Shown in pieces: positions 635-18,699 of a stretch of DNA of 21,190 nucleotides. Position 1 is the stretch's first letter. The number at the start of each line of letters is the position of its first letter. The stretch is from Fonticula alba ATCC 38817 (lineage: Eukaryota; Protista; Nucleariida). The notes under the pieces were generated by a model that saw only the letters and a program-made list of their open reading frames with translations, searched no databases and had not been told where the DNA came from. The DNA lies in assembly GCA_000388065.2 (NCBI GenBank), contig KB932208.1. The stretch is one strand, 5' to 3'. The position numbers were made by a program, and so were the translations under genes.

Positions 635-2143
635 GTGCGCGCGAGACTCGGCTTTTTCCCTCCCGGCGGGGGGGGGGAGGGCCCCATGCCGGGGCACGGC
701 CAGAGTCCCCCGCCCCCCGGAGCGGCCGGCCCGGCGTGCTGGCACCCGTCCAGAGGCCGGGGGCTGGGCCCCGGGCGCAGCCAAGCGACGCAGGCCGCGC
801 GACGCGCCCGGGCATGCCTATTCCCGTCGGGTCCGGGGTATTTGGCGTGGCTGGGCGCGCCGGCGCATGCCCGGGGCCAAGTCCGCCGGCCGGGCCGCGG
901 CGCGGCGGATGGTCTCCGCCGGCGGGGGGCCCCCCCTCGGCCGGTTGGATGTCCACCCGCCGGCCGGAGGGCCCCCAGCGCGGCCACATGCACGCTCCTT
1001 CCCACTGGCGACAGGAACGCTCGCGTCTGTGCCACACCTGGCGCTCGCACGCTTGGGTGGCGCATTCCAGCGCGCGGGCGCGGCGCCCTCGGCCACGGCG
1101 CGTGCCGTCCCGAGGGCGCCCTCCCCGACCGGCGGCGGCGGCCGGCGTCCAGACCCCGCCCGACTGGCCCGGGGGCCGTCCGGCGTCTCGCCGGCCGGCT
1201 GTCAGGCCTGTCCCTTTCTCCCCGGGGCCGGGTCTTCCTCGCATGGGTGCGCGTGCGTGCGCGTGCGGGGCCGTGGTGGCCGCCCGGCCGACCCGCCGGG
1301 CTTCGGTGTAGGGGCAGGGAGCGCGCCCGGATGCGGGTCCGGTGCAGGCGCCCCGCGGCTGGCAGCCACCGAGAGAAGCTGTTTCACTCCCTCCAGCCGT
1401 GGCCCGACCGCCTGGCTGGGGCCTTTCCCATCTCCCGGCCCGGGAAGCGATGAGACAGCCAACCGCGCCTGGGATCCCCCTGCCAGCGCCACAGGCCGGG
1501 AGCGGCGGCGGCGGGCTTGCCGCGCGCGCGCGCTCCTACGTAAGGCGCACTGTCCGAGGCAAGGGGCATGTGTGTGTGTGTGTGTGTGCGTGCCGGGGGG
1601 TCCCGCCGGGCCGGCCGCCTCGTCTACAGCGCCCCGGCGGGCGGCCGCGACCCGCCCACCATACCCCTCGATTGCCTGGCACCGGCCTGCCGTGGGTGGT
1701 GAATGTTTGTTTCCCTTCACTCTCCCCCGGGGCGAAGTGGGCGGCCCGTCGCGAGAAGCGTGGAACGCATCGGTGTGTGTATGTGTATGCGACTGCGGGG
1801 TGCAGGGCTTGCTGTGTGGGGCCCCGGGCGGGCGCAGGGCTTGCCAAGCACGCGGCCCGTGCCGCGGGCGACACAGCCTCATGCGAGCCCCTTCGCGCTT
1901 GTGCGTGCGGGCGTGCGCCCGGCGTGCCCGCCGGTCGCGGGGCATTGTTTGTGCCCTCGGCCGCCTGCGACTCCGGCGTGTTTGTGCATCATGCACCGAC
2001 GGTGTTGTGCCGGTGGTGAGGTGGGATTGGAGCTGTTTTCCCGGGGGGGGGGGAGAACGGGAGAGGAGCGCCCCTCGCCGGTGCTCACATGCAGGGCACT
2101 GGCCACATCAGCCAACATGGTCCGCGGCCTGCTCCCCCCCCCC

Positions 2144-2651
2144 NNNNNNNNNNNNNNNNNNNNNNNNNNNNNNNNNNNNNNNNNNNNNNNNNNNNNNNNN
2201 NNNNNNNNNNNNNNNNNNNNNNNNNNNNNNNNNNNNNNNNNNNNNNNNNNNNNNNNNNNNNNNNNNNNNNNNNNNNNNNNNNNNNNNNNNNNNNNNNNNN
2301 NNNNNNNNNNNNNNNNNNNNNNNNNNNNNNNNNNNNNNNNNNNNNNNNNNNNNNNNNNNNNNNNNNNNNNNNNNNNNNNNNNNNNNNNNNNNNNNNNNNN
2401 NNNNNNNNNNNNNNNNNNNNNNNNNNNNNNNNNNNNNNNNNNNNNNNNNNNNNNNNNNNNNNNNNNNNNNNNNNNNNNNNNNNNNNNNNNNNNNNNNNNN
2501 NNNNNNNNNNNNNNNNNNNNNNNNNNNNNNNNNNNNNNNNNNNNNNNNNNNNNNNNNNNNNNNNNNNNNNNNNNNNNNNNNNNNNNNNNNNNNNNNNNNN
2601 NNNNNNNNNNNNNNNNNNNNNNNNNNNNNNNNNNNNNNNNNNNNNNNNNNN
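2144..2651. other. Assembly gap (508 N)
   Basis: N-run preceded by poly-C. Confidence 1.
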
Positions 2652-3201
2652 CCCTGCCCAGTGCACGACGCCAGAGCACCCGGCCGCCCGGCGAGGCCGA
2701 ATGATTGGTGGGGAGGCTCGTTAAGCCCGGTCGAAGGCCCTCCTCCTCCTCCCCCCTGGATACCCACGCCTTGGGCAGTTGCTGCAGGGGGTCGGCTGTT
2801 CGCCGGCGTGCCCGCGCTCGCGCGGGAGGGGGCTGGCCTCGGCGCCCGTGCGCCATCCCGCCGGAGGGCTCGCTCGGCCCGCCGGGCGCAGATGCTGTCC
2901 GCTCGGCCGCCACGGGGATACGACCCCCCGCGATGGCAGAATGTTGCCCCCTCTCCCCGCGTCGCCCCCGCCCCCCTCCCCGGCACGGGCCCGGCCGTGG
3001 CCCCCGGGCCGCCGGATCTCCCCGCGCGACCTGCTCCTCGCCGGGGGCGCTCCGTGATGGGGGGCGCACCCTGCGCCGGCGCGTGCTCGCTGCCCGCGCC
3101 CTCCCTGACCCCCTCGGGCATCTCCATGCGCGGCTTTCCCGGGCATCCCCGCCTGGCGGAGGGCAGGAGGTAGATCCCGCCAGGGCCCCGGCGATTCCGT
3201 G

Positions 3202-3719
3202 TATATAGCCCCACTGTGGGCGAGCTATTTCGGCCCCCGACGCCGGACGAACTGGCCGCCATCCCGGCACCTCCCCACTCGATCTTGCCACCGCCGCCCT
3301 CCCTACAACTCGCCGGGTGCCTGTGCCTCCGCCCCCCCTCCCCCCCTCTCTCTCTCTCTCTCCGCTCGCTGCCCAGCTCCTTCTGCCCCTTCTTTTTCTC
3401 TGGTGACTCCCCGACTGTCGGTCGATTGGTGCTCAGCCTCCCGCCGCTCCCCGGCCGCGTCGCTTCCTCGCAGGCCCTCCCCTGGCCTTGTTGCTCGCTG
3501 CCCTCTCCTGGCATCCTCTCCGCCTGCTCGGGGCCACCAACCGATCTGCCTCGCGCGCCATCCCTGCCCCACGGGAGTAGGCCGAGCTCGCCGGATCTCT
3601 ACCCTGATTTGGCCAGCTGCCGCTGCCGCTGCCGCCGCCGCCGCCGCTGCTGCTGCCGCCGCCGCCGCCGCCGCCGCCACCACTGCCTCACCCACAGCCG
3701 CCGTCCCAACTATATAGCC
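3202..3719 (+). promoter_or_regulatory. Two identical TATA-like elements (TATATAGCC at 3202 and 3711) upstream of the 7TM-RGS gene
   Basis: The same 9-mer occurs twice in a very GC-rich context, 666 and 157 nt upstream of the ATG. No transcript data are available. Confidence 0.35.
3616..3678 (+). repeat. (GCY)21 trinucleotide repeat upstream of the 7TM-RGS start codon
   Basis: GCT/GCC run read directly, ending 189 nt before the ATG at 3868. Confidence 0.9.
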
Positions 3720-3867: not shown

Positions 3868-6725
3868 ATGGGGTCCATCTGGTTTTTGGACTTCATGCTG
3901 ATGGTCCTCGGGCCGGTGCTGGTCATCTGCGGCGCCCTCTACTTCTCGCGCCTGCACCATGAGCCGGTCCGCACGCGCGGCGCCTGGCACAATACCGTCA
4001 GCGCCGCGGCCGGCCTGCTGACCTCCGTCGGTGTGGCCCTGGCCGACCACCATCCCCGCACGGACTGCCACTTCAGCTTCGCCGTCATCAACAGCTTCCC
4101 GATCCTCTGGTCGCTGGTATGTCCCACCTTTCTTCCCCCCGCCTGCTCCTCGCAGGCCACATGTGTGGCGCATGTCCCCTTTTTGCACGCCCCGCCCGGC
4201 CCTGCTTCCCCACCACCGCCCCTGACCATCGTCCGATGCCTCCGGCCGTCGTGGCCGCTCCCCCGCGCGCGCGCGCCCCCCCCCCCCGCACGCATGTGCC
4301 CGCTCGTCCCTGGTAGCCGGTCATTGGCCGAGGCTTTCTCCTGTACCTGGAGAATGAGTTCCACTCGCTGACCCTGTCGACATCGTCGGTGGTCGGGGGC
4401 GGCGGGTCCTCGCACGGCGAGCCGGAGATCGACGACACCCCCGGGTCCAGTGCCTCCATGGAGTCCCTCTCCTCGCCGCCCCACTCGCCGCCCTTCTCCG
4501 GCACGGCCTCCTCCTCGGACGACCTGTCCGAGGTGAAGGGCTCCCCGGACAAGCACAGCCCCCTGGGCGTGGTGTCGCCCCATTCCAGCCAGGCCCTGGG
4601 CCCGGTGACCGGGCTGACCGGCGACACGACCCTGCCCCTGGCATCCGGCACCGGTGACCGGCCGGCCAGCACCCACCGCAGCCTCACCTCCACCACCGGG
4701 TCGCACCTGCACGCCACCGACGACCTGCTGAACACCCTCGACGACCGGTCCATGCCGGAGCACATCCGCAAGGACATCCAACGCCTGCGCCGGGTGGTCT
4801 ACTGGCGGAAGACCATCTCCCCCTGGTGGGCCCAGATCGCCATCTACACGGCCATGGTGGCCATCAACATGGTCCTGTCCTTTGCCCTGCTCTACAGCGG
4901 CGGTGATCCCGACCGGTACATCGGCCCGCGCACCGGGGCCACCCTCCCGGGCAGCCTGGACGGCGAGTGCAGCCCCCACATGCTGGCCGTCATCGCCGTG
5001 TCCACCATGGTGTGCCTGGTTCTGGGCCTGGTCCTGGTCTGGATCCTGTGGAACCGCCGGGATGTGTACAAGATTAAGCAGGAGCTCGGTGTGCGTGTCC
5101 TCCCCTCGCCTGGCCTTCCCGGGCCGGGCATCCTGGCCTCCTTGGTGCTCGGCACGGGGCAGCCCCTTGGCCCGGGGTCCTTCGTCTGTCATTGTTTCTT
5201 CTTCTCTCTCCCTCTTTGTTTTCTTCTCTCTCCCTCTTTGTTTTCTTCTCTCTCCCTCTCTGTTTTCTTCTCTCCCTCCCTCTCCCTCGATCCCCCCCTC
5301 CCTCCCTCTCCCTCCCTCTCCCTCGATCCCCCCCCTCCCTCCAGCTGACTCACGCCCTGCACCATGCCCCCCTTCGCCTCCGGGTCCCCCTGGGGCCCTT
5401 GTGCGGCCGCGCCCCGTGGCCACCTCCAAACAGGTCTTCCTCGGCATCGCCGTGGTGGGGTTCATTGTCTTCGTCATCACGGTGGTCGGCGACTGGAACC
5501 ACCAGGTCTCTTCCAATGTCACGGTGGTGGTGATTGTTGTCTGCAACATTTGGCTCTTCACCTTCCCCTATGTGTTGTCCTTCTCGCGGTTCTTCCGCAA
5601 GTTGACCAACTACTCGCCCGACTCGCGGGAAAGCTTCTTCAGCGACTTGACGTCGGCCGGTGGCGCCGGGGCCGGGGTCGACCCGGCCGGCGAATCGGGC
5701 TCCTTCCGCACCGCGTCCGGCGTGTACATCGGCTTCGGCACGGCCGATGACCCCGCCGGGCTCGGGGGCCCTGGCATTGGCAGCGCCGGGAACACCGGCG
5801 GCAGCAGCCGCTTCCGGGCCCTGGGCTTTGCCTCGCGCCATGCCAACAACTCCGACACCTCCGACGTCAAGCACTACTTCTCCACCGAGATGTCCCAGCT
5901 GGAGCATGGGACCCCGCACGGGGGCCGCAGCGGGGTGGCCACTCCGGCCGCGCCGGCCGGCGGGCAGAGCCTCATCGGCGACTCGCTGGAGTCCCTGTCG
6001 GCCAGCAACTCGCCGAACACCTCCTGCACCTCGATCACCATCGAGACGACCACCACGTCGGTCGTCAGCACCACCGGGCCGGCGGCCGGCCCGCGCGGCG
6101 GCCGGCGCCCCAGCCATGCGGCCCTCGGCTCGGGTCCCGGCTCCTCGGGCGATGACTCCAGCGAGCGGCGCATCCTGCGCTTTGACATCTTCGCGCGCCA
6201 TGCGCCGGCCGAGGCCCGGCGCTCCTTCGAGGAGTTCTGCAAGATGAGCTTCTCCACCGAGCAGCTCTTCTTCATGCGCAGTGACGACAACTACCGGCGC
6301 AGCCACAAGCGCAGCATCGTGCGTCTACCCATATGGGTTCCCTGCTGTTGCCGTGCATTGGCATGGGCCTTTGCGTCGGGCCACTTCCGGTTTCCCGCCC
6401 TCCCCCGCTCTCGCCCCCGCCCGATCATGGCTAATGCTGGCTTTCCCCCCCCCCCCCCCCCCTTTGTTCCCCTTCCCCTTGTTCCCCCCTCCTCACGGCG
6501 TGCCCCCCCGCCCCCCCCCCCCCCACTTCTCCTCGCCCTCTCCCCNNNNNNNNNNNNNNNNNNNNNNNNNNNNNNNNNNNNNNNNNNNNNNNNNNNNNNN
6601 NNNNNNNNNNNNNNNNNNNNNNNNNNNNNNNNNNNNNNNNNNNNNNNNNNNNNNNNNNNNCCCCCCCCGCCCTTTGTTCCCCTTCCCCTTGTTCGCCATT
6701 TGTGCGGCCTTCGCCCTGGGGCCCG

Positions 6726-6777
<52 letters not shown>

Positions 6778-6951
6778 CAAGCGCTACGCGGCCGCTGCCA
6801 AGATCATGGACACCTTCATCCGCGCAAACTCCACCCACGAGCTGAACATCGATGGCAGCACCCGGCGGAATCTGATTCAACAGTTCAACTTGATCCCGGT
6901 GCCCCCGGGCATGGCGCCGCCTGGCGGCACTGCCGAGGGGGCCGGGCGCGC

Positions 6952-6999
<48 letters not shown>

Positions 7000-7681
7000 G
7001 CCGCGACGCTCGCGCTGGATCTTCGGCAGCGACAGTTCATCGGGCGCCGAGCTGGCCATTCCGCTTGACCCGCCACCGCCCTTCGATCGGCCGGGTGCCG
7101 GGGCGCCCGCCTCCGGTGGCCAGGCCGGAGCGCTTGGTGCCGCAGCCGATGCCAAGGCCGCCCCCCTGGCCCAGGGTGCCGGTGGCCCGGGCATCCGACC
7201 CGGTCATGGGTCTGTCATTCTCGACATGGATCGGATGCTGGCTCTGCAGGATGCCGAGGCTGGGCCGCCGCGTTTGCTTTTCGACGCGGTTCGCAAGGAG
7301 GTCCTCATCCAGTTGGCGCACTTGATGCGCATGTGGGCCAGCAAGGACGAGGGCCGGCGGCTGATGGCCCAGGCGACGGAGGCCCTGCGCCAGGCGGACG
7401 CCCGAGCCGAGGCGCGCCAGCGCGCCCACCCCCCCGCCTGGGCCGATGCCGTCCGGGCTGACGCAGCCCGGGCCAATGCCGAGCCGGTGCCCCGGTCAGT
7501 TCCGCTGCCGGTGCCCGACATGGCCCCGGCGTCGGTGCCCGACATGGCCCCGGCGTCGGTGTCCGACATGGCCCCGGCGTCGGTGTCCGACATGGCCCCG
7601 GCACCGGTGTCCGACTTGACCCCGGCACCGGTGCCCGATGCCCCTCTTGACATTGAGCCGGCGTCGGCCTCTGACGAGTAA
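3868..7681 (+). CDS. 7TM-RGS protein (GPCR-like seven-helix membrane domain fused to a Regulator of G-protein Signalling domain), 4 exons, about 937 aa
   Basis: Exons 3868-4116, 4317-5090, 5434-6318, 6776-7681; all introns GT-AG and phase 0; start context gccATGG. Seven hydrophobic segments: WFLDFMLMVLGPVLVICGALYF; TVSAAAGLLTSVGVALA; CHFSFAVINSFPILWSLPVIGRGFLL; WWAQIAIYTAMVAINMVLSFALLY; MLAVIAVSTMVCLVLGLVLVWILW; GVFLGIAVVGFIVFVITVV; VTVVVIVVCNIWLFTFPYVL. The C-terminal part aligns by eye to the RGS box: FEEFCKMSFSTEQLFF..NYRR, AKIMDTFIRANSTHELNIDGSTRRNL, LFDAVRKEV. Confidence 0.88.
5199..5275 (+). repeat. 22-bp pyrimidine-rich tandem repeat, about 3.3 copies, in 7TM-RGS intron 2
   Basis: TTCTTCTCTCTCCCTCTTTGTT at 5199 and 5221, and at 5243 with 1 mismatch. 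Confidence 0.85.
6546..6660. other. Assembly gap (115 N) inside 7TM-RGS intron 3
   Basis: N-run with a duplicated flank. Confidence 1.
6727..6774 (+). repeat. (CA)24 microsatellite ending directly at the 3' splice site of 7TM-RGS intron 3
   Basis: The CA run ends ...CACAG at 6775, followed by exon codons AAC AAG CGC. Confidence 0.95.
6953..6997 (+). repeat. (GGC)15 coding trinucleotide repeat (poly-Gly)
   Basis: Pure run read directly, in frame inside the RGS-domain insertion. Confidence 0.95.
7510..7640 (+). repeat. 24-bp coding minisatellite, about 5.5 copies, encoding V[PS]DMAPA[SP]
   Basis: Unit GGTGCCCGACATGGCCCCGGCGTC recurs at 7510, 7534, 7558, 7582, 7606 and 7630, degenerating towards the 3' end. 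It lies in frame in the last exon of the 7TM-RGS gene. Confidence 0.95.
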
Positions 7682-9719: not shown

Positions 9720-12118
9720 ATGCAGGCGCCCATCCCGCGCGCCCCCTCCGGGCACACGTCGTGCGACACGATTGCCTTGCATAAGCGCCACTATGATCTG
9801 GGAATCCAGGAATGCATGGGCGCTGTACGGATAGATGAGACCGGCACCCAGCCGCTGGTGGCCATCGAAAAGTACCGGATCGCTTGTCAGCACTGGCATC
9901 AGGCCTTGCAGATGCGGCCCTTCTTCACCGAGGCCGAATGGTATGTCCCGCTCACCGACGACTTTTGCTCCGTCCCCTTGTCTGTTTGCACCCGTGTCTT
10001 GCTGACACCCAAAATGTCTCCCTCTGTGTCCCTCTGTGTCCCTCTGTATCCCTCTGTGTCCCTCTGTCTCCCTCTGCCTCTCTCTCTCTCCCCCCCTCTC
10101 CCCCCCTCTCCCCCCCTCTCCACCTCTCTCCACCTCCCCCCCGGGACCGCGACGTACATAGGCAAAATGTGGCGGACCTGGACAGGCGAATCAGTTCCAA
10201 CTTTCAGCAAACCCTGGACCGACTCTTCTTCCTGGAGGCCCGCCATCTGAATCAGAAATCCACGCACCTGGGCCGAGATATCCCCCCTCTGCCGGACTTC
10301 GGCGCCGGGCCCGCGACCCGCCGATCGATCGACACCTATGACGATGGTGAGCCGGTGGTGGATTTCATCACCGCGGCCACCGACTACATCGGCAGCTTCT
10401 TTGGGTTCTCCCCGGCTGCGGCCACCTCGAGTGCCGCGCCCGCGGCGGCGCCCACGCCCGGCGCGGTTGCCACAGCGCCCGCGGGGAACCCCCCCCGTGC
10501 CGCCATCTCGGCTCGCTCGGTGGCCCCGGCCACACGCGCCTCCCTCCCGCCGGCCCAAGCCCCCAGAGGCGAGACCCTTCCCCCGCACCTCCCGGCCAAC
10601 CTCCCCTTCCCCGGGCGGGCATCCACGAATGTGCCCCCCTCGGCCGCACCGGCCCCCATGGCCCGGGGGTCGGTCACTTCCCGGGCAGCCGGTGCCGGGG
10701 CCAGCTCCGCCCTGGCCGGCATCGACCCGCAGCTGGCCAACTCCATCCTGGATGATGTGATCACGCCGGGCAGTGCGCGCGACAATGGCCCGGCCTGGGA
10801 CGACATCGCCGGGCTGGCCAACGCCAAGCAGGCTCTGCATGAGGCGGTCATCCTGCCGGCCCTGCGGCCGGACCTCTTTTCCGGCCTCCGGGCGCCGGTC
10901 AGTGGGATTCTCCTCTTCGGCCCGCCCGGGACCGGGAAAACCCTGCTGGCACGGGCATGCGCCTCGCAAGCGCGGTGCACCTTTTTCAACATCTCGGCCG
11001 CCTCGCTGACGGCCAAATATGTGCGGCCTTCCCCCCCCCCCCCCCCCCCCCCCACTTCTCCTCGCCCTCTCCCCTGCTCTGGCCCTCCCTTCCTTTCGTT
11101 GATTCTCCAATGCTGACTCTCGCCGGCCCGGCCACCGATGTGCTCGGGTCCATGGGATTGCAGGTCGGCGACTCGGAAAAGCGCGTGCGGGCTCTCTTTG
11201 CCCTGGCGCGGGAGCTGGCGCCATCGATCATCTTCGTGGACGAAATTGACTCCATTCTGTCCGAGCGATCGGACAATGAGCATGAGGCGGCGCGGCGGCT
11301 GAAGACCGAGTTCCTCATCCAGTTTGATGGGGTGGTTTCCAACTCGGACCCGGCCGCACCGCGGGTTCTGGTTTTGGCGGCCACCAATCGCCCCGGCGAG
11401 TTGGACCAGGCCGTTCGTCGTCGTCTTGTACGCTGCCTCACTCGGCCCTGTCCCTGTCTTTTTTTCCCCCTCCTGCGGCCGGGCTTTTCCTCCTGTGGGG
11501 CCGGTCCTCAGGCGGGCATGGGCTGCTGCTGACATCCTTCTTCTTTGGACCCCGCCCCCCCCCCNNNNNNNNNNNNNNNNNNNNNNNNNNCCCTCCCCCC
11601 CTCCCGCCGGGCCGCCGCCTGTTTGGTTGGGACGTCGCCCCCTGCTCGAGGTAGTCCCGGAGGATTTACATCCCCCTGCCGGATCTGGAAGCGCGGGTCC
11701 AGTGCATCAGTCGCATCCTGCAATCCAATGCCACCGCGCGACACGCCATGTCCCCGAGCGATGTGCGCGAGTGCGCGCGCCTCACGGAGGGCTACTCGCC
11801 GGCGGATCTGGCCCAGCTGTGCAAGGAGGCCGCCATGCTGCCCATTCGCGAGCTCGGCAGCCGGGTGCAATCTGTCCGGGCAAATGATGTGCGTCTCGGC
11901 GCGCATGTGCTGGCGCTGCTCGAATTCCCCTCACCCCCGCTCGCTTTGGTCTAACTCCCTTCGGACCCGTGGCTCCCGTCTCCCAGGTCCGGCCGATTGG
12001 GCTGCAGGACTTCCGGTCAGCCCTGGCGCGCATCCGGCCCACCGTGTCACCGGGGTCCCTGCGCGATTTGGAGCGCTTTGACAGGGAGTTTGGATCCTAC
12101 TCCCAGGGGGACATTTAG
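9720..12118 (+). CDS. SPAST: Spastin-like microtubule-severing AAA ATPase (MIT domain, AAA module, Vps4_C), 5 exons, about 569 aa
   Basis: Exons 9720-9940, 10162-11020, 11164-11427, 11655-11888, 11987-12118, all phase-consistent. MIT-like helices [39 protein letters not shown]. Walker A GPPGTGKT; pore loop [15 protein letters not shown]; Walker B IIFVDEID; [19 protein letters not shown]; [16 protein letters not shown]; C-terminal IRPTVS..FDREFG. MIT plus [13 protein letters not shown] is the spastin pattern. The exact 5' end is uncertain (see findings). Confidence 0.92.
10021..10080 (+). repeat. 10-bp tandem repeat (CCTCTGTGTC), 6 copies, degenerate, in spastin intron 1
   Basis: A period of 10 is visible across one full sequence line. 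Confidence 0.9.
11565..11590. other. Assembly gap (26 N) inside spastin intron 3
   Basis: N-run flanked by C-runs. Confidence 1.
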
Positions 12119-16004: not shown

Positions 16005-18699
16005 GCGTGTGGGTGGCCAGGGGGCGCGGCAGCCTCCGAATGCGACGTACCGATGGTAGCACGCGTCGTACGGCATGTGCGGGAAGCCGCCATAGAGGTC
16101 GGCCTCGAGCGGGGTCTTCAGCGACCCGGCGCCCGTGGCCAGGCCACTGGACGGCACGCCGGCCTCCAGGAAGGACAGGTAGTCGGACCCACCGTCGAGG
16201 GGGGTGTAGGCGAAGGGAATGGCCGGGTTGGCCACCTGGCCGAAGTAGTGGCCGATGGTCTCGCCGATGCGGGTGCTGGCATTGCGCATGGGCTCCGGGA
16301 AGTCGGCATACGGCCAGTCGATGGTGGGAGTGCCGGTGTACACCATGGGCAGGCCATTGAGCGAGCCCAGCATGTCCAAGTTGACGTAGGCCACCGCAGG
16401 GAAGGGGTCCACCCCCGGCGGGGGCGTGGACGAGCCGGAGCTGCCGGAGCTGCCGGAGTTGCCGGAAGAGGAGGCGCCGGTGTGCTTCTGCTGGGCCAGG
16501 CCCAAACCCACTGGAGGGTAGACAAAGTGATCGCGCACGTGGTACCGCGAGCCAAAGAGCCCGGTCTCCTCGGCGCCCCACCAGGCGAACCGCACCGGGT
16601 TGACTGAGCGCTCGTGCAGCTTCTCGGCATGGAATCGCAGGACTGCGCAGCCGACGGGGAGGGGGGACACGGGGGGAGAGGTGAGACCATGCGACGGGGG
16701 CCGCGCGCTGCGCAGGCAAAGAGAGCGAGGGAAGGGGGGGGGGAGGGGCCGGTTCGGGAAGGCCAAAAAAATTTGGGAACCGGGCCCCGGAAGCCCGCCG
16801 GGCCGGAGAACATGGAAAAGAAGACGGAGACGGCCGGAGCAAGAGCAAAGAGGGGCGCGGACAGGAGCAGGGACGGGGGAGGAGGGAAAAAGGGGGGAGA
16901 CGCTGGGGGGGGGGGGCACGGCCAAGAAACTTGCGTACCCAGCTCCAGCAGCGCCGCCGAGCCGGAGGCATTGTCATTGAGCCCGGGTCCGGCCGGGACC
17001 GAGTCCAGGTGCGCGCCGACCAGCAGCAGGTCCGTCGACAGGGGAGCCCCGGGGGCCGGGGCAGTGCGACCGTCCGGGCTGGCGGCCCGCGCCGGCGGCA
17101 CATGGACCACCAGGTTGAAGGTCTCGGCCAGGCGGAGCTCGGCATCCATGCTGAAGGAGAGCGTGCTCAGGGGCCCGCCACTGAGCAGGACCCCGGAAAC
17201 GGTGGAGGACACCGACATGACCGGGACCTGGACCAGCGGGTCCCCAAGGCGCCAGGCCTCCGGCAGCATGTACGGGCGCCGGAGGCCGCCGGCCGAGGCC
17301 GGGCTCACAACCATCACCAAGGCCGCCAGCTCGAAGACCGGGGTGTCGGGCTGGCGCGCGGCCAGGGCCGCCTGCGCGGCCAGCACGCGATCCAGCGCAC
17401 TGCAGGGGGCCGCCAGCGTCGCCATGTGGGCGGGGGCCGCCGGGGACTCGGTCTGCAGCAGCAGGCCCAGGGCGCCGGCCGGCGGCTCGGGCAGCAGCCC
17501 GGCATAGTCCTCCGGCTGGCAGCCCGTCTCGGCCGGGATGGATACCACCTGCCCGACGGTGGTGTCAACGTGCGTGGCATTGCTGCCGTACGAGAGGACC
17601 GAGAAGTCCTGCCCCGGGACCAGGGCCAGCGGCATCGGCGTCAGGATGTCCATGGCGCCGGCGGTGCGATGCACGTGCAGCGGAGTGTCGAAGTATTCGC
17701 GCTGGACGTCGCTGTGTGTGTGTGCGTGCGTGCGTGCGCGCGTGCGCGCGTGGGGGAAGAGCGAGGTCAGCGGAAGGGGGAAGGCGTGGGCAGAGGCGCA
17801 AGCGGAAGGGGGAAGGCGTGGGCAGGGGCGCCAGCGGACGGGGCCGGCGGCCAAGAGGGCAGCGGATGGGGGCGCGGATGCAAGCAGGCAGCGGGGGGAG
17901 GGGGGGGGGCAGAGGGGCAGGGCACACGCGTGCTCACGCACAAGGTGGTGTTCTGGCGCAGGGCCGCCTCGATGTAGAGAGCCGACGCCTCGTAGCCGAG
18001 GGTGTCGGCCGCGCGGGTGGGCAGCCCGGCGCCGGGGGCCTGCTGGTGGGCGGCGGCCAGGACGGCGGCCAGGGCATCCGCCGACACCGGGGTGTAATCC
18101 ACGGCCACCGGGGCCAGGGACGAGGGCCGGCCATGCCCGGGGATGGCGGCCACCCCGCCGGCCACCGAGGCCACCGGGATGAAGGCGGCCCGGCGGATGT
18201 CGGCCGAGGCGGAGGCCAGCGCGGCGTCCGTGAAGGCGCCCAGATGCGTCAGCAGCGAGCGTGCCTCGATGGCCATGCTCAAGCGCTCGCCCTCCTTTAC
18301 CGGGGTGGCCAGCGACGTGCGCACGGCCAGCGAGATGACCACGGCGCTGCCGATGAAGATGGCCACCACCGAGGCCAGGGAGAGGTAGATCTGCCAGCGG
18401 GCCGGCGGACGGGCGTCCGGCCCAGGAGGAAGCGACCCGGTGGACCCGCCACCGAGGGCGCCCTCATCGTCGTCGCTGGAGCCGGCGCCGAAGGGGGCCG
18501 CCTCGTCGGTGCACTCGTCGGCATACAGGTCCCCGCCGACGCCGGTGCCCCCCTGCCCGTAGTGCCGGTACGTCTGGTCGGCACGGCTCGGCCGCAGAGG
18601 GGTGGTGTCCAGGCCTGGCGAGGGGATGTCCGAGTCGCAGGAGGACATCATCGGGTGGGCCGAGGAATCGGCCGACCGCAAGGAGGAGGGCGATTGCAT
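15678..18699 (-). CDS. Type II membrane M28-family zinc aminopeptidase (aminopeptidase Y / S. griseus aminopeptidase-like) with a probable PA domain, 4 exons, about 756 aa
   Basis: Exons 18699-17942, 17711-16939, 16642-16051, 15825-15678; summed length 2271 nt is in frame. Complete M28 metal-ligand set: GAHLDSV, GLNDNASGSAALLE, FAWWGAEETGLFGS, YVNLDM, CYHRECD. PA-like segment ETGCQPEDY..ALGLLL..CSALDRVLAAQ..AALVMV..VPVMSVS. Single TM WQIYLSLASVVAIFIGSAVVISLAV at 18396-18322. The start could instead be the MM at 18651. Confidence 0.92.
15927..16002 (+). repeat. (GTGC)19 tetranucleotide microsatellite in peptidase intron 3, reading (GCAC)n on the sense strand
   Basis: Pure run read directly. 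Confidence 0.95.
17713..17750 (-). repeat. GCAC/CA repeat abutting the 3' splice site of peptidase intron 1
   Basis: The sense strand reads ...GCACGCACGCACACACACACAG before exon 2 at 17711. Confidence 0.85.

What the first reader, a model, noticed from the sequence alone, without database searches (positions are those of the whole stretch)
3868..7681. 7TM-RGS fusion: a receptor-like protein carrying its own G-alpha GAP domain
Seen: after splicing, exactly seven hydrophobic helices followed by an RGS box. Cys at the start of TM3 (4066) and in ECL2 (4968) fits a GPCR-type disulfide, and DVYKIKQEL lies between TM5 and TM6. Known: 7TM-RGS proteins (Arabidopsis RGS1, Aspergillus GprK, Magnaporthe Rgs7/8) couple sensing to switching G proteins off rather than on, and are not part of the canonical animal GPCR repertoire. 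Inference: this organism has a receptor-GAP signalling module. The gene is not visible in any single ORF of the track because it is split over four exons, so it is easily mis-annotated.
Basis: partly seen in the sequence, partly recalled or inferred. Interest (0 to 1): 0.75.

Follow-up and report, generated by a model that had tools for sequence, protein, structure and literature searches.

The report
Seven-helix receptor fused to RGS domain
This four-exon gene of the slime-mould-like microbe Fonticula alba encodes a membrane receptor-type protein with a built-in "off switch" for G proteins, a known kind of protein that I could not find in the public protein set I searched.

Summary

- **Gene model:** window 3868-7681 (+) is one four-exon gene: 3868-4116, 4317-5090, 5434-6318 and 6776-7681.
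- **Family match:** a profile built from 18 full-length 7TM-RGS proteins maps onto the four exons in order and without a hole. Profile positions are 14-91, 92-223, 225-353 and 345-448; i-E runs from 2e-9 to 4e-14.
- **The N gap (6546-6660):** it lies inside intron 3. No exon is missing there, and the frame does not depend on its length.
- **Linkage of the two parts:** exon 3 alone carries TM6, TM7, a linker and the start of the RGS box in one ORF. The receptor-RGS fusion therefore does not rest on splicing.
- **RGS box:** it is divergent. Pfam scores it at only 18.4 bits on one exon piece, below the cut-off. It belongs to a family whose other members score 48-72 bits. A profile that includes its pieces hits only RGS structures in the PDB.
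- **Genome context:** Fonticula alba has at least eight collinear paralogues and at least four G-alpha genes.
- **Fold:** a paralogue model shows a 7TM bundle closest to class C GPCRs (Z 21), plus an RGS fold.
- **Not shown:** GAP activity is inferred. RNA evidence could not be obtained.
- **Earlier scan notes:** the scan had already noted 7TM-RGS genes on two other pieces of this genome.

Verdict: a new member of a known kind.

The parts
3868..4116 (+). Exon 1. Holds the start codon (context gccATGg), TM1 (about 3868-3954), the conserved EPxxxRG loop, TM2 (about 3985-4044), the conserved Cys at 4066-4068 and the first half of TM3.
   Evidence: The family HMM covers positions 14-91 at 3889-4116 and ends exactly at the donor. 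Annotated paralogues P0002 and P0005 have an intron at the same residue.
4117..4316 (+). Intron 1 (200 nt, phase 0; donor gtatgt, acceptor tag).
   Evidence: GC is flat across codon positions and GC skew is -0.37. Read through unspliced, the frame stops at 4371.
4317..5090 (+). Exon 2. Holds the second half of TM3 (4317-4349), a ~150-residue Ser/Pro-rich cytoplasmic loop, TM4 (about 4830-4898), extracellular loop 2 with the conserved Cys at 4968-4970, TM5 (about 4965-5057) and the loop motif DVYKIKQEL (5061-5087).
   Evidence: The family HMM covers positions 92-223 at 4317-5093 and starts exactly at the acceptor. The loop has GC3 of 0.97.
5091..5433 (+). Intron 2 (343 nt, phase 0; donor gtgcgt, acceptor cag), rich in CT repeats.
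   Evidence: Paralogues on C2:0.47M and C4:3.01M run uninterrupted across this point.
5434..6318 (+). Exon 3. Holds TM6 (5434-5490), TM7 with the conserved FP..LSF motif (5518-5583), a ~200-residue linker and RGS helices about 1-4 (6181-6318). The Glu-Gln pair at 6259-6264 sits where canonical RGS domains have Glu-Asn.
   Evidence: The family HMM covers positions 225-353 at 5440-6309. The linker has GC3 of 0.93. This is one uninterrupted ORF linking the TM part to the RGS box.
6319..6775 (+). Intron 3 (phase 0; donor gtgcgt, acceptor cag after a (CA)n run). It contains the assembly gap 6546-6660 and a 37-nt repeat on both sides of the gap (6451-6487 and 6661-6697).
   Evidence: Profile positions abut across the junction. 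Uninterrupted paralogues show no extra residues.
6776..7681 (+). Exon 4 with the stop codon. Holds the RGS middle part (6776-6895) with the ELNID motif (Asn at 6845-6847), a Gly/Ala/Pro-rich insert (6896-7267), the RGS C-terminal helices (7268-7342) and a repetitive Pro/Ala tail.
   Evidence: Pfam RGS profile positions 45-79 score 18.4 bits, E 0.003. The family HMM covers positions 345-448, i-E 3.6e-14. See also alignment A1.
6899..7249 (+). Uncertain sub-segment of exon 4 (351 nt, 117 codons). It has no codon-position GC signal and ends in cag. It could be an in-frame intron, but no consensus donor was found.
   Evidence: GC at codon positions 1, 2, 3 is 0.84, 0.74, 0.78. No donor-like motif was found within 6776-7300.

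Best explanation
The locus is one four-exon gene of Fonticula alba. It encodes a roughly 937-residue 7TM-RGS protein.

Architecture:
- A very short extracellular N-terminus.
- A seven-helix bundle of the GPCR fold. By a paralogue model it is closest to the class C 7TM domain.
- A long disordered second cytoplasmic loop.
- A ~200-residue cytoplasmic linker.
- A C-terminal RGS box carrying a low-complexity insert.

Shown here:
- The exon structure.
- Collinear homology of all four exons to a pan-eukaryotic 7TM-RGS family.
- The RGS identity of the C-terminal domain at family level.
- The presence of G-alpha genes in the same genome.

Inferred:
- The protein sits in the plasma membrane N-out and C-in. 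Counting the first and last 15 residues of the long TM3-TM4 loop, the predicted cytoplasmic loops hold 15 K+R against 3 on the outer loops.
- It holds its RGS box next to G-alpha subunits and speeds up their GTP hydrolysis.
- A ligand, phosphorylation or endocytosis of the 7TM part would then relieve this brake, as described for Arabidopsis RGS1 and Magnaporthe Rgs7.
For: - Organism: named by hits to H696_ proteins of Fonticula alba.
- Family profile on the window: a profile of 18 full-length homologues hits the six-frame translation in four collinear, abutting pieces that coincide with the predicted splice sites. Without any Fonticula sequence in the profile, the hits stay collinear, with i-E of 7e-10 to 8e-6 for four of the five pieces; the fifth (TM6-7) is weak at i-E 0.018 (alignments).
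- Homologues: they are 425-585 aa, and crude hydropathy finds 5-7 hydrophobic segments in them (seven in about half). They have canonical Pfam RGS scores, 48-72 bits for most and 32.7 for one.
- RGS profile against the PDB: profile A1, which includes this gene's three pieces, gives 35 hits. All are RGS proteins; the best is RGS16 at 3.4e-7, and RGS4 scores 4.3e-5.
- Paralogues: eight loci in the genome have the same order of parts.
- Conserved residues: the paired Cys, EPxxxRG, RDxYxIKxEL, FP..LS, FxxFC..E and E-[LI]-N-[IL]-D are conserved.
- Structure of paralogue P0002 (pLDDT 77.9): seven TM helices plus an RGS fold. The best matches are class C GPCRs at Z 17-21. RGS4 matches at Z 14.7, rmsd 1.7 A over 115 residues.
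- Substrate: at least four G-alpha loci.
- Topology: charge bias of the loops.
- Coding signal.
Against: - Pfam RGS is below its cut-off on the exon pieces (18.4 bits against 23.9). It is also below the cut-off for three of the four annotated full-length or C-terminal paralogue models scanned (15-21 bits); P0005 passes at 25.3 bits.
- The Asn next to the conserved Glu of the canonical SEEN loop is Gln here, and Ile in several paralogues.
- By my reading of the alignment, the helix 7-8 contact residues are not conserved.
- A ~124-residue insert interrupts the RGS box.
- The spliced protein was never scored or folded as a whole, because joining exons was left out by rule.
- The structural evidence comes from a paralogue that is about 25-35% identical.
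Confidence: 0.85

Rival explanations
1. The architecture is real, but the RGS box has lost GAP activity. It would then serve as a scaffold or G-alpha-binding module, as in GRKs or axin. The protein would be a receptor-like anchor rather than a GAP.
For: - Pfam scores are sub-threshold for this gene and most Fonticula paralogues.
- Glu-Gln or Glu-Ile replaces Glu-Asn in the helix 3-4 loop.
- There is a long insert between RGS helices.
- de Mendoza et al. 2014 (PMC3971589) note that not all RGS domains are GAPs.
Against: - The Asn of the E-[LI]-N-[IL]-D loop is kept in this gene and in the six other paralogues whose piece covers that motif (in the seventh, L031, it follows the in-frame stop). 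From my knowledge of the RGS4-Gi-alpha-1 structure, this is the residue that reaches the G-alpha catalytic site.
- The neighbouring conserved Glu is kept too.
- The paralogue model superposes on RGS4 at 1.7 A.
Confidence: 0.2
2. The model joins two genes. One would be a membrane protein (exons 1-2, or 1-3) and the other a separate soluble RGS protein. Public annotation does split the C2:0.47M paralogue this way.
For: - The paralogue is annotated as two proteins, P0003 and P0001.
- There is an assembly gap between the RGS halves.
Against: - Exon 3 is one ORF containing TM6, TM7, the linker and the first RGS helices, with a continuous coding signal.
- The same linkage lies in single ORFs in paralogues.
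- Full-length homologues from other eukaryotes are single proteins.
Confidence: 0.03
3. The gene is a decaying or silent paralogue in an expanded family, intact by chance.
For: - Its closest paralogue (L031) has an in-frame TAA at a conserved RGS residue.
- The gene is not present in the public protein sets searched.
- The low-complexity insert has no codon-position signal.
Against: - The four exons hold about 937 codons with no stop.
- GC3 is 0.92-0.94 in exons 1-3 and 0.85-0.87 in the coding-like parts of exon 4.
- All family-invariant residues are kept.
- All three splice-site pairs are intact.
Confidence: 0.07

Closest known systems
Pan-eukaryotic 7TM-RGS proteins of about 460-585 aa (e.g. 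the Pharyngomonas kirbyi, Syssomonas multiformis and Lentomonas proteins found here; ESM Atlas clusters from Endomyxa, Zoopagomycota, Ascomycota and Oomycota)
   Same: - Sequence homology runs through the TM4-TM7 part and the RGS box in single alignments.
- The conserved Cys pair, the ICL3 motif and the TM7 Pro are shared.
- The domain order and the short N-terminus are the same.
- The Atlas finds whole-protein structural matches at TM 0.6-0.74.
   Different: - The window protein is about twice as long, because of low-complexity loops, a linker and an insert.
- Its RGS box is more divergent, with Glu-Gln instead of Glu-Asn.
- Fonticula has an expanded set of at least eight copies.
Arabidopsis RGS1 (AtRGS1), the reference 7TM-RGS
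   Same: - The architecture and the presumed logic are the same: a membrane 7TM domain holds a GAP for G-alpha. Urano et al. 2012 (PMC3386157, abstract) describe it as resetting a self-activating G-alpha.
- Both have a short N-terminus and a flexible linker.
   Different: - Homology of the 7TM parts was not tested here, because no tool-supplied AtRGS1 sequence was available.
- Plant clusters were not among the nearest Atlas hits.
- Plants have one copy; Fonticula has many.
- Whether Fonticula G-alpha proteins self-activate is unknown.
Fungal RGS-domain receptors (Aspergillus GprK class, Magnaporthe Rgs7)
   Same: - Both belong to Holomycota and have a TM domain plus an RGS box.
- MoRgs7 is regulated by endocytosis on cue sensing (PMC10184898, abstract).
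- Ascomycota and Zoopagomycota clusters are among the nearest Atlas neighbours.
   Different: The Atlas rows are leads without alignments. No fungal sequence was aligned here.
Class C GPCRs, in particular GPR158 with RGS7-Gbeta5
   Same: - The 7TM bundle of the paralogue model is closest to class C 7TM domains: TAS1R2/3 at Z 21.0, mGlu at Z 20 and GPR158 at Z 19.9, against class A at Z 14-17.
- One family member aligns to Pfam 7tm_3 over the whole domain (26.6 bits, E 6e-6).
- GPR158 recruits an RGS protein to the membrane (PMC8611064).
   Different: - There is no Venus-flytrap or Cys-rich ectodomain.
- No member reaches the Pfam 7tm_3 threshold.
- The 7TM profile has no sequence-level match to class C chains in the PDB.
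- The RGS is fused in cis rather than bound in trans.

Membership tests
7TM-RGS proteins | Seven transmembrane helices N-terminal to the RGS box | tested here: met
   Hydropathy gives five strong segments plus two weaker ones. All seven align to the TM helices of homologues. The paralogue model has seven TM helices. No dedicated topology predictor was available, and the spliced protein was not assembled.
7TM-RGS proteins | An RGS box on the same polypeptide, C-terminal and cytoplasmic | tested here: met
   Exon 3 is a single ORF with TM6-TM7, the linker and the RGS N-part. The charge bias of the loops places the C-terminus inside.
7TM-RGS proteins | GAP activity on a G-alpha subunit | not testable with these tools
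   Only the presence of at least four G-alpha loci and conservation of the loop Asn and Glu could be checked.
7TM-RGS proteins | Homology of the 7TM domain to that of AtRGS1 | not tested
   No AtRGS1 sequence was supplied by a tool. Homology was shown only to protist, Syssomonas and metagenomic 7TM-RGS proteins.
RGS domain (Pfam PF00615) | Score above Pfam's gathering cut-off (23.9 bits) | tested here: inconclusive
   The best exon piece scores 18.4 bits, E 0.003, for profile positions 45-79 only. The six-frame search gives 19.7 bits. The domain is split by an intron and an insert, and the joined sequence was not scored by rule. Paralogue P0005 scores 25.3 bits, and non-Fonticula homologues 48-72 bits.
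RGS domain (Pfam PF00615) | Nine-helix RGS fold, with profile similarity to solved RGS domains | tested here: met
   The A1 profile hits only RGS chains in the PDB. The paralogue model matches RGS4 at Z 14.7, rmsd 1.7 A, and RGS16 at TM 0.84. This is family-level evidence; the window's own domain was not folded.
RGS domain (Pfam PF00615) | G-alpha-contacting Asn in the helix 5-6 loop and Glu-Asn in the helix 3-4 loop | tested here: inconclusive
   The loop Asn (6845-6847) and Glu (6259-6261) are present. The second Asn is Gln at 6262-6264. The mapping to RGS4 residue numbers is from my own knowledge.
Class C GPCR (Pfam 7tm_3, PF00003) | Sequence match to the 7tm_3 profile above its cut-off | tested here: not met
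   No hit for any exon or for P0002. One homologue reaches 26.6 bits against a cut-off of 33.5. The 7TM profile finds no class C chain in the PDB.
Class C GPCR (Pfam 7tm_3, PF00003) | Large extracellular ligand-binding domain (Venus flytrap) | tested here: not met
   The protein starts a few residues before TM1, with a stop upstream in frame. Only fold-level resemblance of the 7TM bundle is seen.

The most novel reading that the evidence does not exclude
Two linked readings are not excluded. First, the 7TM domain of the whole 7TM-RGS family may be an ancient offshoot of the class C (glutamate-type) GPCR bundle. 7TM-RGS proteins would then be a cis-fused counterpart of the animal GPR158-RGS7 arrangement. 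Second, Fonticula alba, an aggregative relative of fungi, has expanded the family to nine or more copies, plus a version with a giant ectodomain. "GAP-receptor" signalling may therefore be a main sensory mode in this lineage, for example in prey sensing or aggregation.
Probability: 0.3. Interest if true: 0.55.

Novelty: new member of a known kind. Interest (0 to 1): 0.35.

Why it matters
7TM-RGS proteins reverse the usual receptor logic: they switch G proteins off until a signal removes them. They are known from plants, some fungi, filastereans, ichthyosporeans and many protists. The 2014 survey read here (PMC3971589) did not sample Fonticula.

This gene adds a well-supported, apparently unannotated member in the sister lineage of fungi. 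With its paralogues, it shows a sizeable expansion in an organism studied for aggregative multicellularity.

It also corrects the gene catalogue. One family member is missing from the public protein set and two are fragmented. This would bias counts of receptors and RGS proteins in comparative studies.

The class-C-like fold of the 7TM part is a lead on the origin of the family.

Tried and rejected
- Word-index protein searches with exon 3, alone and inside its long ORF, found nothing, not even the gene itself.
- Pfam on whole exons gave only a weak RGS hit.
- A PDB sequence search with the whole of exon 4 was swamped by poly-Gly linkers.
- A single MAFFT alignment of all exon fragments with a full-length paralogue misplaced the fragments and was discarded (A2). 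Domain-level alignments and a local HMM were used instead.
- The first literature search timed out.
- The 7TM profile against PDB sequences gave no GPCR hit.
- Foldseek on the whole 583-residue model gave only RGS hits, with E above 0.01. The VIA wide search was needed to see the GPCR fold.
- There is therefore no Pfam score, topology prediction or structure model for the spliced window protein itself.
- Rejected: an upstream start or extra N-terminal exons. The family starts at TM1 and there is a stop upstream.
- Rejected: a hidden exon in the gap. The profile positions abut across the junction.
Full report
**What is there**

The window is about 70% G+C. It belongs to Fonticula alba. Paralogues of the gene hit NCBI proteins H696_01127, H696_03215, H696_00296 and H696_03456 of that species (taxonomy). 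An earlier scan note had named the organism.

On the + strand, four open segments are bounded by GT-AG sites: 3868-4116, 4317-5090, 5434-6318 and 6776-7681.
- The donors are gtatgt, gtgcgt and gtgcgt.
- All three introns are phase 0.
- The exons show a strong third-position GC signal: GC3 is 0.92-0.94 against 0.46-0.61 at positions 1 and 2. This holds inside the long low-complexity loop of exon 2 (GC3 0.97) and the linker of exon 3 (0.93).
- The introns are flat across codon positions and strongly C-rich (GC skew -0.37 to -0.52).

**The gap**

The N run 6546-6660 lies inside intron 3 (6319-6775).
- Exon 3 ends and exon 4 starts on complete codons, so the unknown length of the gap cannot affect the frame.
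- A 37-nt stretch is 95% identical on both sides of the gap (6451-6487 and 6661-6697). This is either a tandem repeat within the intron or overlapping contig ends.
- Comparison with relatives shows that no exon is hidden in the gap. In the RGS alignment, paralogues with no intron at this point have 24-28 residues between the DN(Y/F) and (F/H)(I/V)R landmarks, where this gene has 27.
- In the family profile, exon 3 ends at position 353 and the true start of exon 4 continues from there.

**Exon-by-exon searches**

- Pfam finds only a partial RGS match: residues 2-36 of exon 4 match profile positions 45-79 at 18.4 bits, E 0.003, against a cut-off of 23.9.
- The six-frame scan of the genome gives 19.7 bits at the same place.
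- Two word-index searches with exon 3 found nothing, not even the gene itself. The same database does hold Fonticula proteins.
- The gene therefore seems absent from the public protein sets, or annotated in a very different form.

**Paralogues**

I searched the whole genome with single exon pieces and ran a local tblastn on the fetched loci. Together these show eight loci with the same order of parts: TM1-3, end of TM3, TM4-5, TM6-7, RGS N-part, RGS middle, RGS C-part.

The eight loci are:
- the window itself
- C1:4.01M
- C1:4.19M
- C2:0.47M
- C2:3.83M
- C3:2.39M
- C4:1.87M
- C4:3.01M

A ninth copy, H696_00296 (809 aa, seven hydrophobic segments, RGS at 20.5 bits), lies elsewhere on contig C1.

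Several paralogues confirm this gene's junctions:
- The C2:0.47M copy has TM5, the RDVYRIKQEL loop, TM6, TM7, the linker and the whole RGS box in one ORF.
- The C2:3.83M copy has an uninterrupted RGS box that passes Pfam's cut-off (25.3 bits).
- Annotated models P0002 and P0005 have their first intron at exactly the residue where I place intron 1.

Within this gene, exon 3 alone links TM6 and TM7 to the first RGS helices. The fusion therefore does not depend on any splice.

**Relatives elsewhere**

An exhaustive HMMER search was run with the full-length paralogue P0002 (H696_03215, 583 aa). It gave 42 proteins at E of 0.001 or less. Many align in a single stretch from TM4/5 through the first half of the RGS box.
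- The non-Fonticula hits are 425-585 aa. Crude hydropathy finds 5-7 hydrophobic segments in them (seven in about half). Most have canonical Pfam RGS domains of 48-72 bits; one (P0033) scores 32.7.
- Named sources are Pharyngomonas kirbyi, Syssomonas multiformis and a Lentomonas species. The rest are metagenomic.

I built an HMM from 18 full-length members and searched the six-frame translation of the window (alignments).

| Profile positions | Window coordinates |
|---|---|
| 14-91 | 3889-4116 |
| 92-223 | 4317-5093 |
| 225-353 | 5440-6309 |
| 345-448 | 6746-7411 |

- The i-E values run from 2e-9 to 4e-14, and nothing else in the window scores.
- The first two boundaries coincide to the base with my donor and acceptor.
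- The small overlap at profile positions 345-353 is the translated (CA)n run of the intron.
- A profile without any Fonticula sequence gives the same collinear picture, with i-E of 8e-6 to 7e-10 for four of the five pieces; the fifth (TM6-7) is weak at 0.018.

**The RGS box**

Alignment A1 combines three uninterrupted paralogue domains with exon pieces, including this gene's three. Used as a profile against PDB sequences, it gives 35 hits, all RGS proteins: RGS16 at 3.4e-7, RGS2, RGS5, RGS18, RGS8, RGS4 at 4.3e-5, and the Entamoeba RGS-RhoGEF.

This gene keeps the following features:
- the FxxFC..S..(S/T)E..(L)FF block
- the E-L-N-I-D loop
- the closing F-D-A...L...W helices

From my own knowledge of the RGS4-Gi-alpha-1 complex, the loop Asn is the residue that reaches the G-alpha catalytic site. 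It is present here at 6845-6847. The Glu-Asn pair of the helix 3-4 loop is Glu-Gln here, and Glu-Ile in several paralogues.

A Gly/Ala/Pro-rich insert of about 124 residues (6896-7267) separates the middle and C-terminal helices. Its core (6899-7249) has 351 nt, has no codon-position signal and ends in cag. It could be an unrecognised in-frame intron, but no consensus donor is present.

**The 7TM part**

Hydropathy gives five strong segments. TM2 is weaker, and TM3 straddles the exon 1/2 junction.
The D and E of the TM5-TM6 loop motif and the TM7 Pro are nearly invariant. All of them are present in this gene.
- The charge distribution fits N-out and C-in. Counting the first and last 15 residues of the long TM3-TM4 loop, there are 15 K+R on the presumed cytoplasmic loops against 3 outside.

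P0002 was modelled with AlphaFold2 using 38 family sequences, giving pLDDT 77.9 and pTM 0.74. The model shows seven TM helices, a disordered second cytoplasmic loop and a helical C-terminal domain.

Structure searches with that model:
- Foldseek finds RGS domains, with TM up to 0.85 on the target.
- The VIA wide search ranks class C GPCR 7TM domains first: TAS1R2/3 at Z 21.0 (rmsd 3.0 A, 241 residues), then mGlu5, mGlu2, mGlu1, GPR158, GABA-B, GPRC5D, GPR156 and CaSR, all at Z 17-21.
- Class A receptors score Z 14-17.
- RGS4 scores Z 14.7 at 1.7 A.

Other evidence on the class C resemblance:
- One family member (P0030) aligns to Pfam 7tm_3 over the whole bundle, but below the cut-off (26.6 bits).
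- The family 7TM profile has no sequence match to class C chains in the PDB.
- The ESM Atlas places P0002, both whole and as the 7TM part alone, next to RGS-bearing clusters of 470-570 aa from Endomyxa, Zoopagomycota, Ascomycota and Oomycota. These are leads only.

**Mechanism**

Shown: the architecture, the family, and the presence of at least four G-alpha loci.

Inferred: the protein is a membrane-anchored GAP for G-alpha whose 7TM part regulates access or location. Two systems support this by analogy:
- AtRGS1 (PMC3386157, PMC3718340; abstracts)
- MoRgs7 (PMC10184898)

I put the architecture at about 0.85. Given the architecture, I put GAP competence at about 0.6-0.7.

**Comparison with the literature**

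de Mendoza et al. 2014 (PMC3971589) report 7TM-RGS proteins in many bikonts and, among opisthokonts, in chytrids, filastereans and ichthyosporeans. Fonticula does not occur in that paper. A 2025 GPCR survey mentions Fonticula only for HRM domains (PMC12716839).

UniProt already labels the annotated paralogues "RGS domain-containing protein". Two earlier first-reader notes of this scan describe 7TM-RGS genes on other pieces of this genome.

The finding is therefore a new, apparently unannotated member of a known kind, within a lineage-specific expansion.

**Limits**

- There is no score, topology prediction or fold for the joined protein of the window.
- Homology to AtRGS1 was not tested.
- The structural statements rest on a paralogue.

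Noticed in passing
L031:5669-5770 (G000:C1, about 4,016,170-4,016,270): The closest paralogue of the window gene has an in-frame TAA exactly where the family has the conserved Glu of the RGS E-[LI]-N-[IL]-D loop. It may be a pseudogene or a sequencing error.
   Followed up: no
L032 (G000:C2:467500-475500) and L034 (G000:C4:1865000-1874999): Public annotation fragments the family. The C2:0.47M gene is split into P0003 (N half) and P0001/H696_01127 (C half). The C4:1.87M gene is annotated only from the linker onward (P0017, no TM).
   Followed up: partly
L029:1152-8212 (G000:C4, about 413.6-420.7 kb): This is a different and much larger TM-RGS gene. A 1919-aa ORF has a weak Pfam 7tm_3 match (aa 1320-1415, E 0.0015), several hydrophobic segments and the RGS N-part. 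The RGS C-part lies in the next exon (32.1 bits). It appears to be a 7TM-RGS with a ~1300-residue ectodomain.
   Followed up: partly
window 6451-6487 and 6661-6697; 6727-6774: A 37-nt C-rich repeat flanks the assembly gap. A (CA)n run of about 24 units leads directly into the acceptor of exon 4.
   Followed up: partly
window 9884-11113 (+) and 16118-17938 (-): Neighbouring ORFs carry pieces of an AAA ATPase domain (41.2 bits) and of a Peptidase_M28 domain (36.9 bits). These are probably exons of the flanking genes.
   Followed up: no
window, within about 2100-3000: A second run of N lies upstream of the gene. It shows as X in the ORFs at 2108-3514 and as a dip to 0.37 in the GC profile.
   Followed up: no
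P0002 model (G000:C4:3.01M paralogue): The 7TM bundle of the 7TM-RGS family is structurally closest to class C GPCR 7TM domains, including GPR158, which binds RGS7 in trans.
   Followed up: partly
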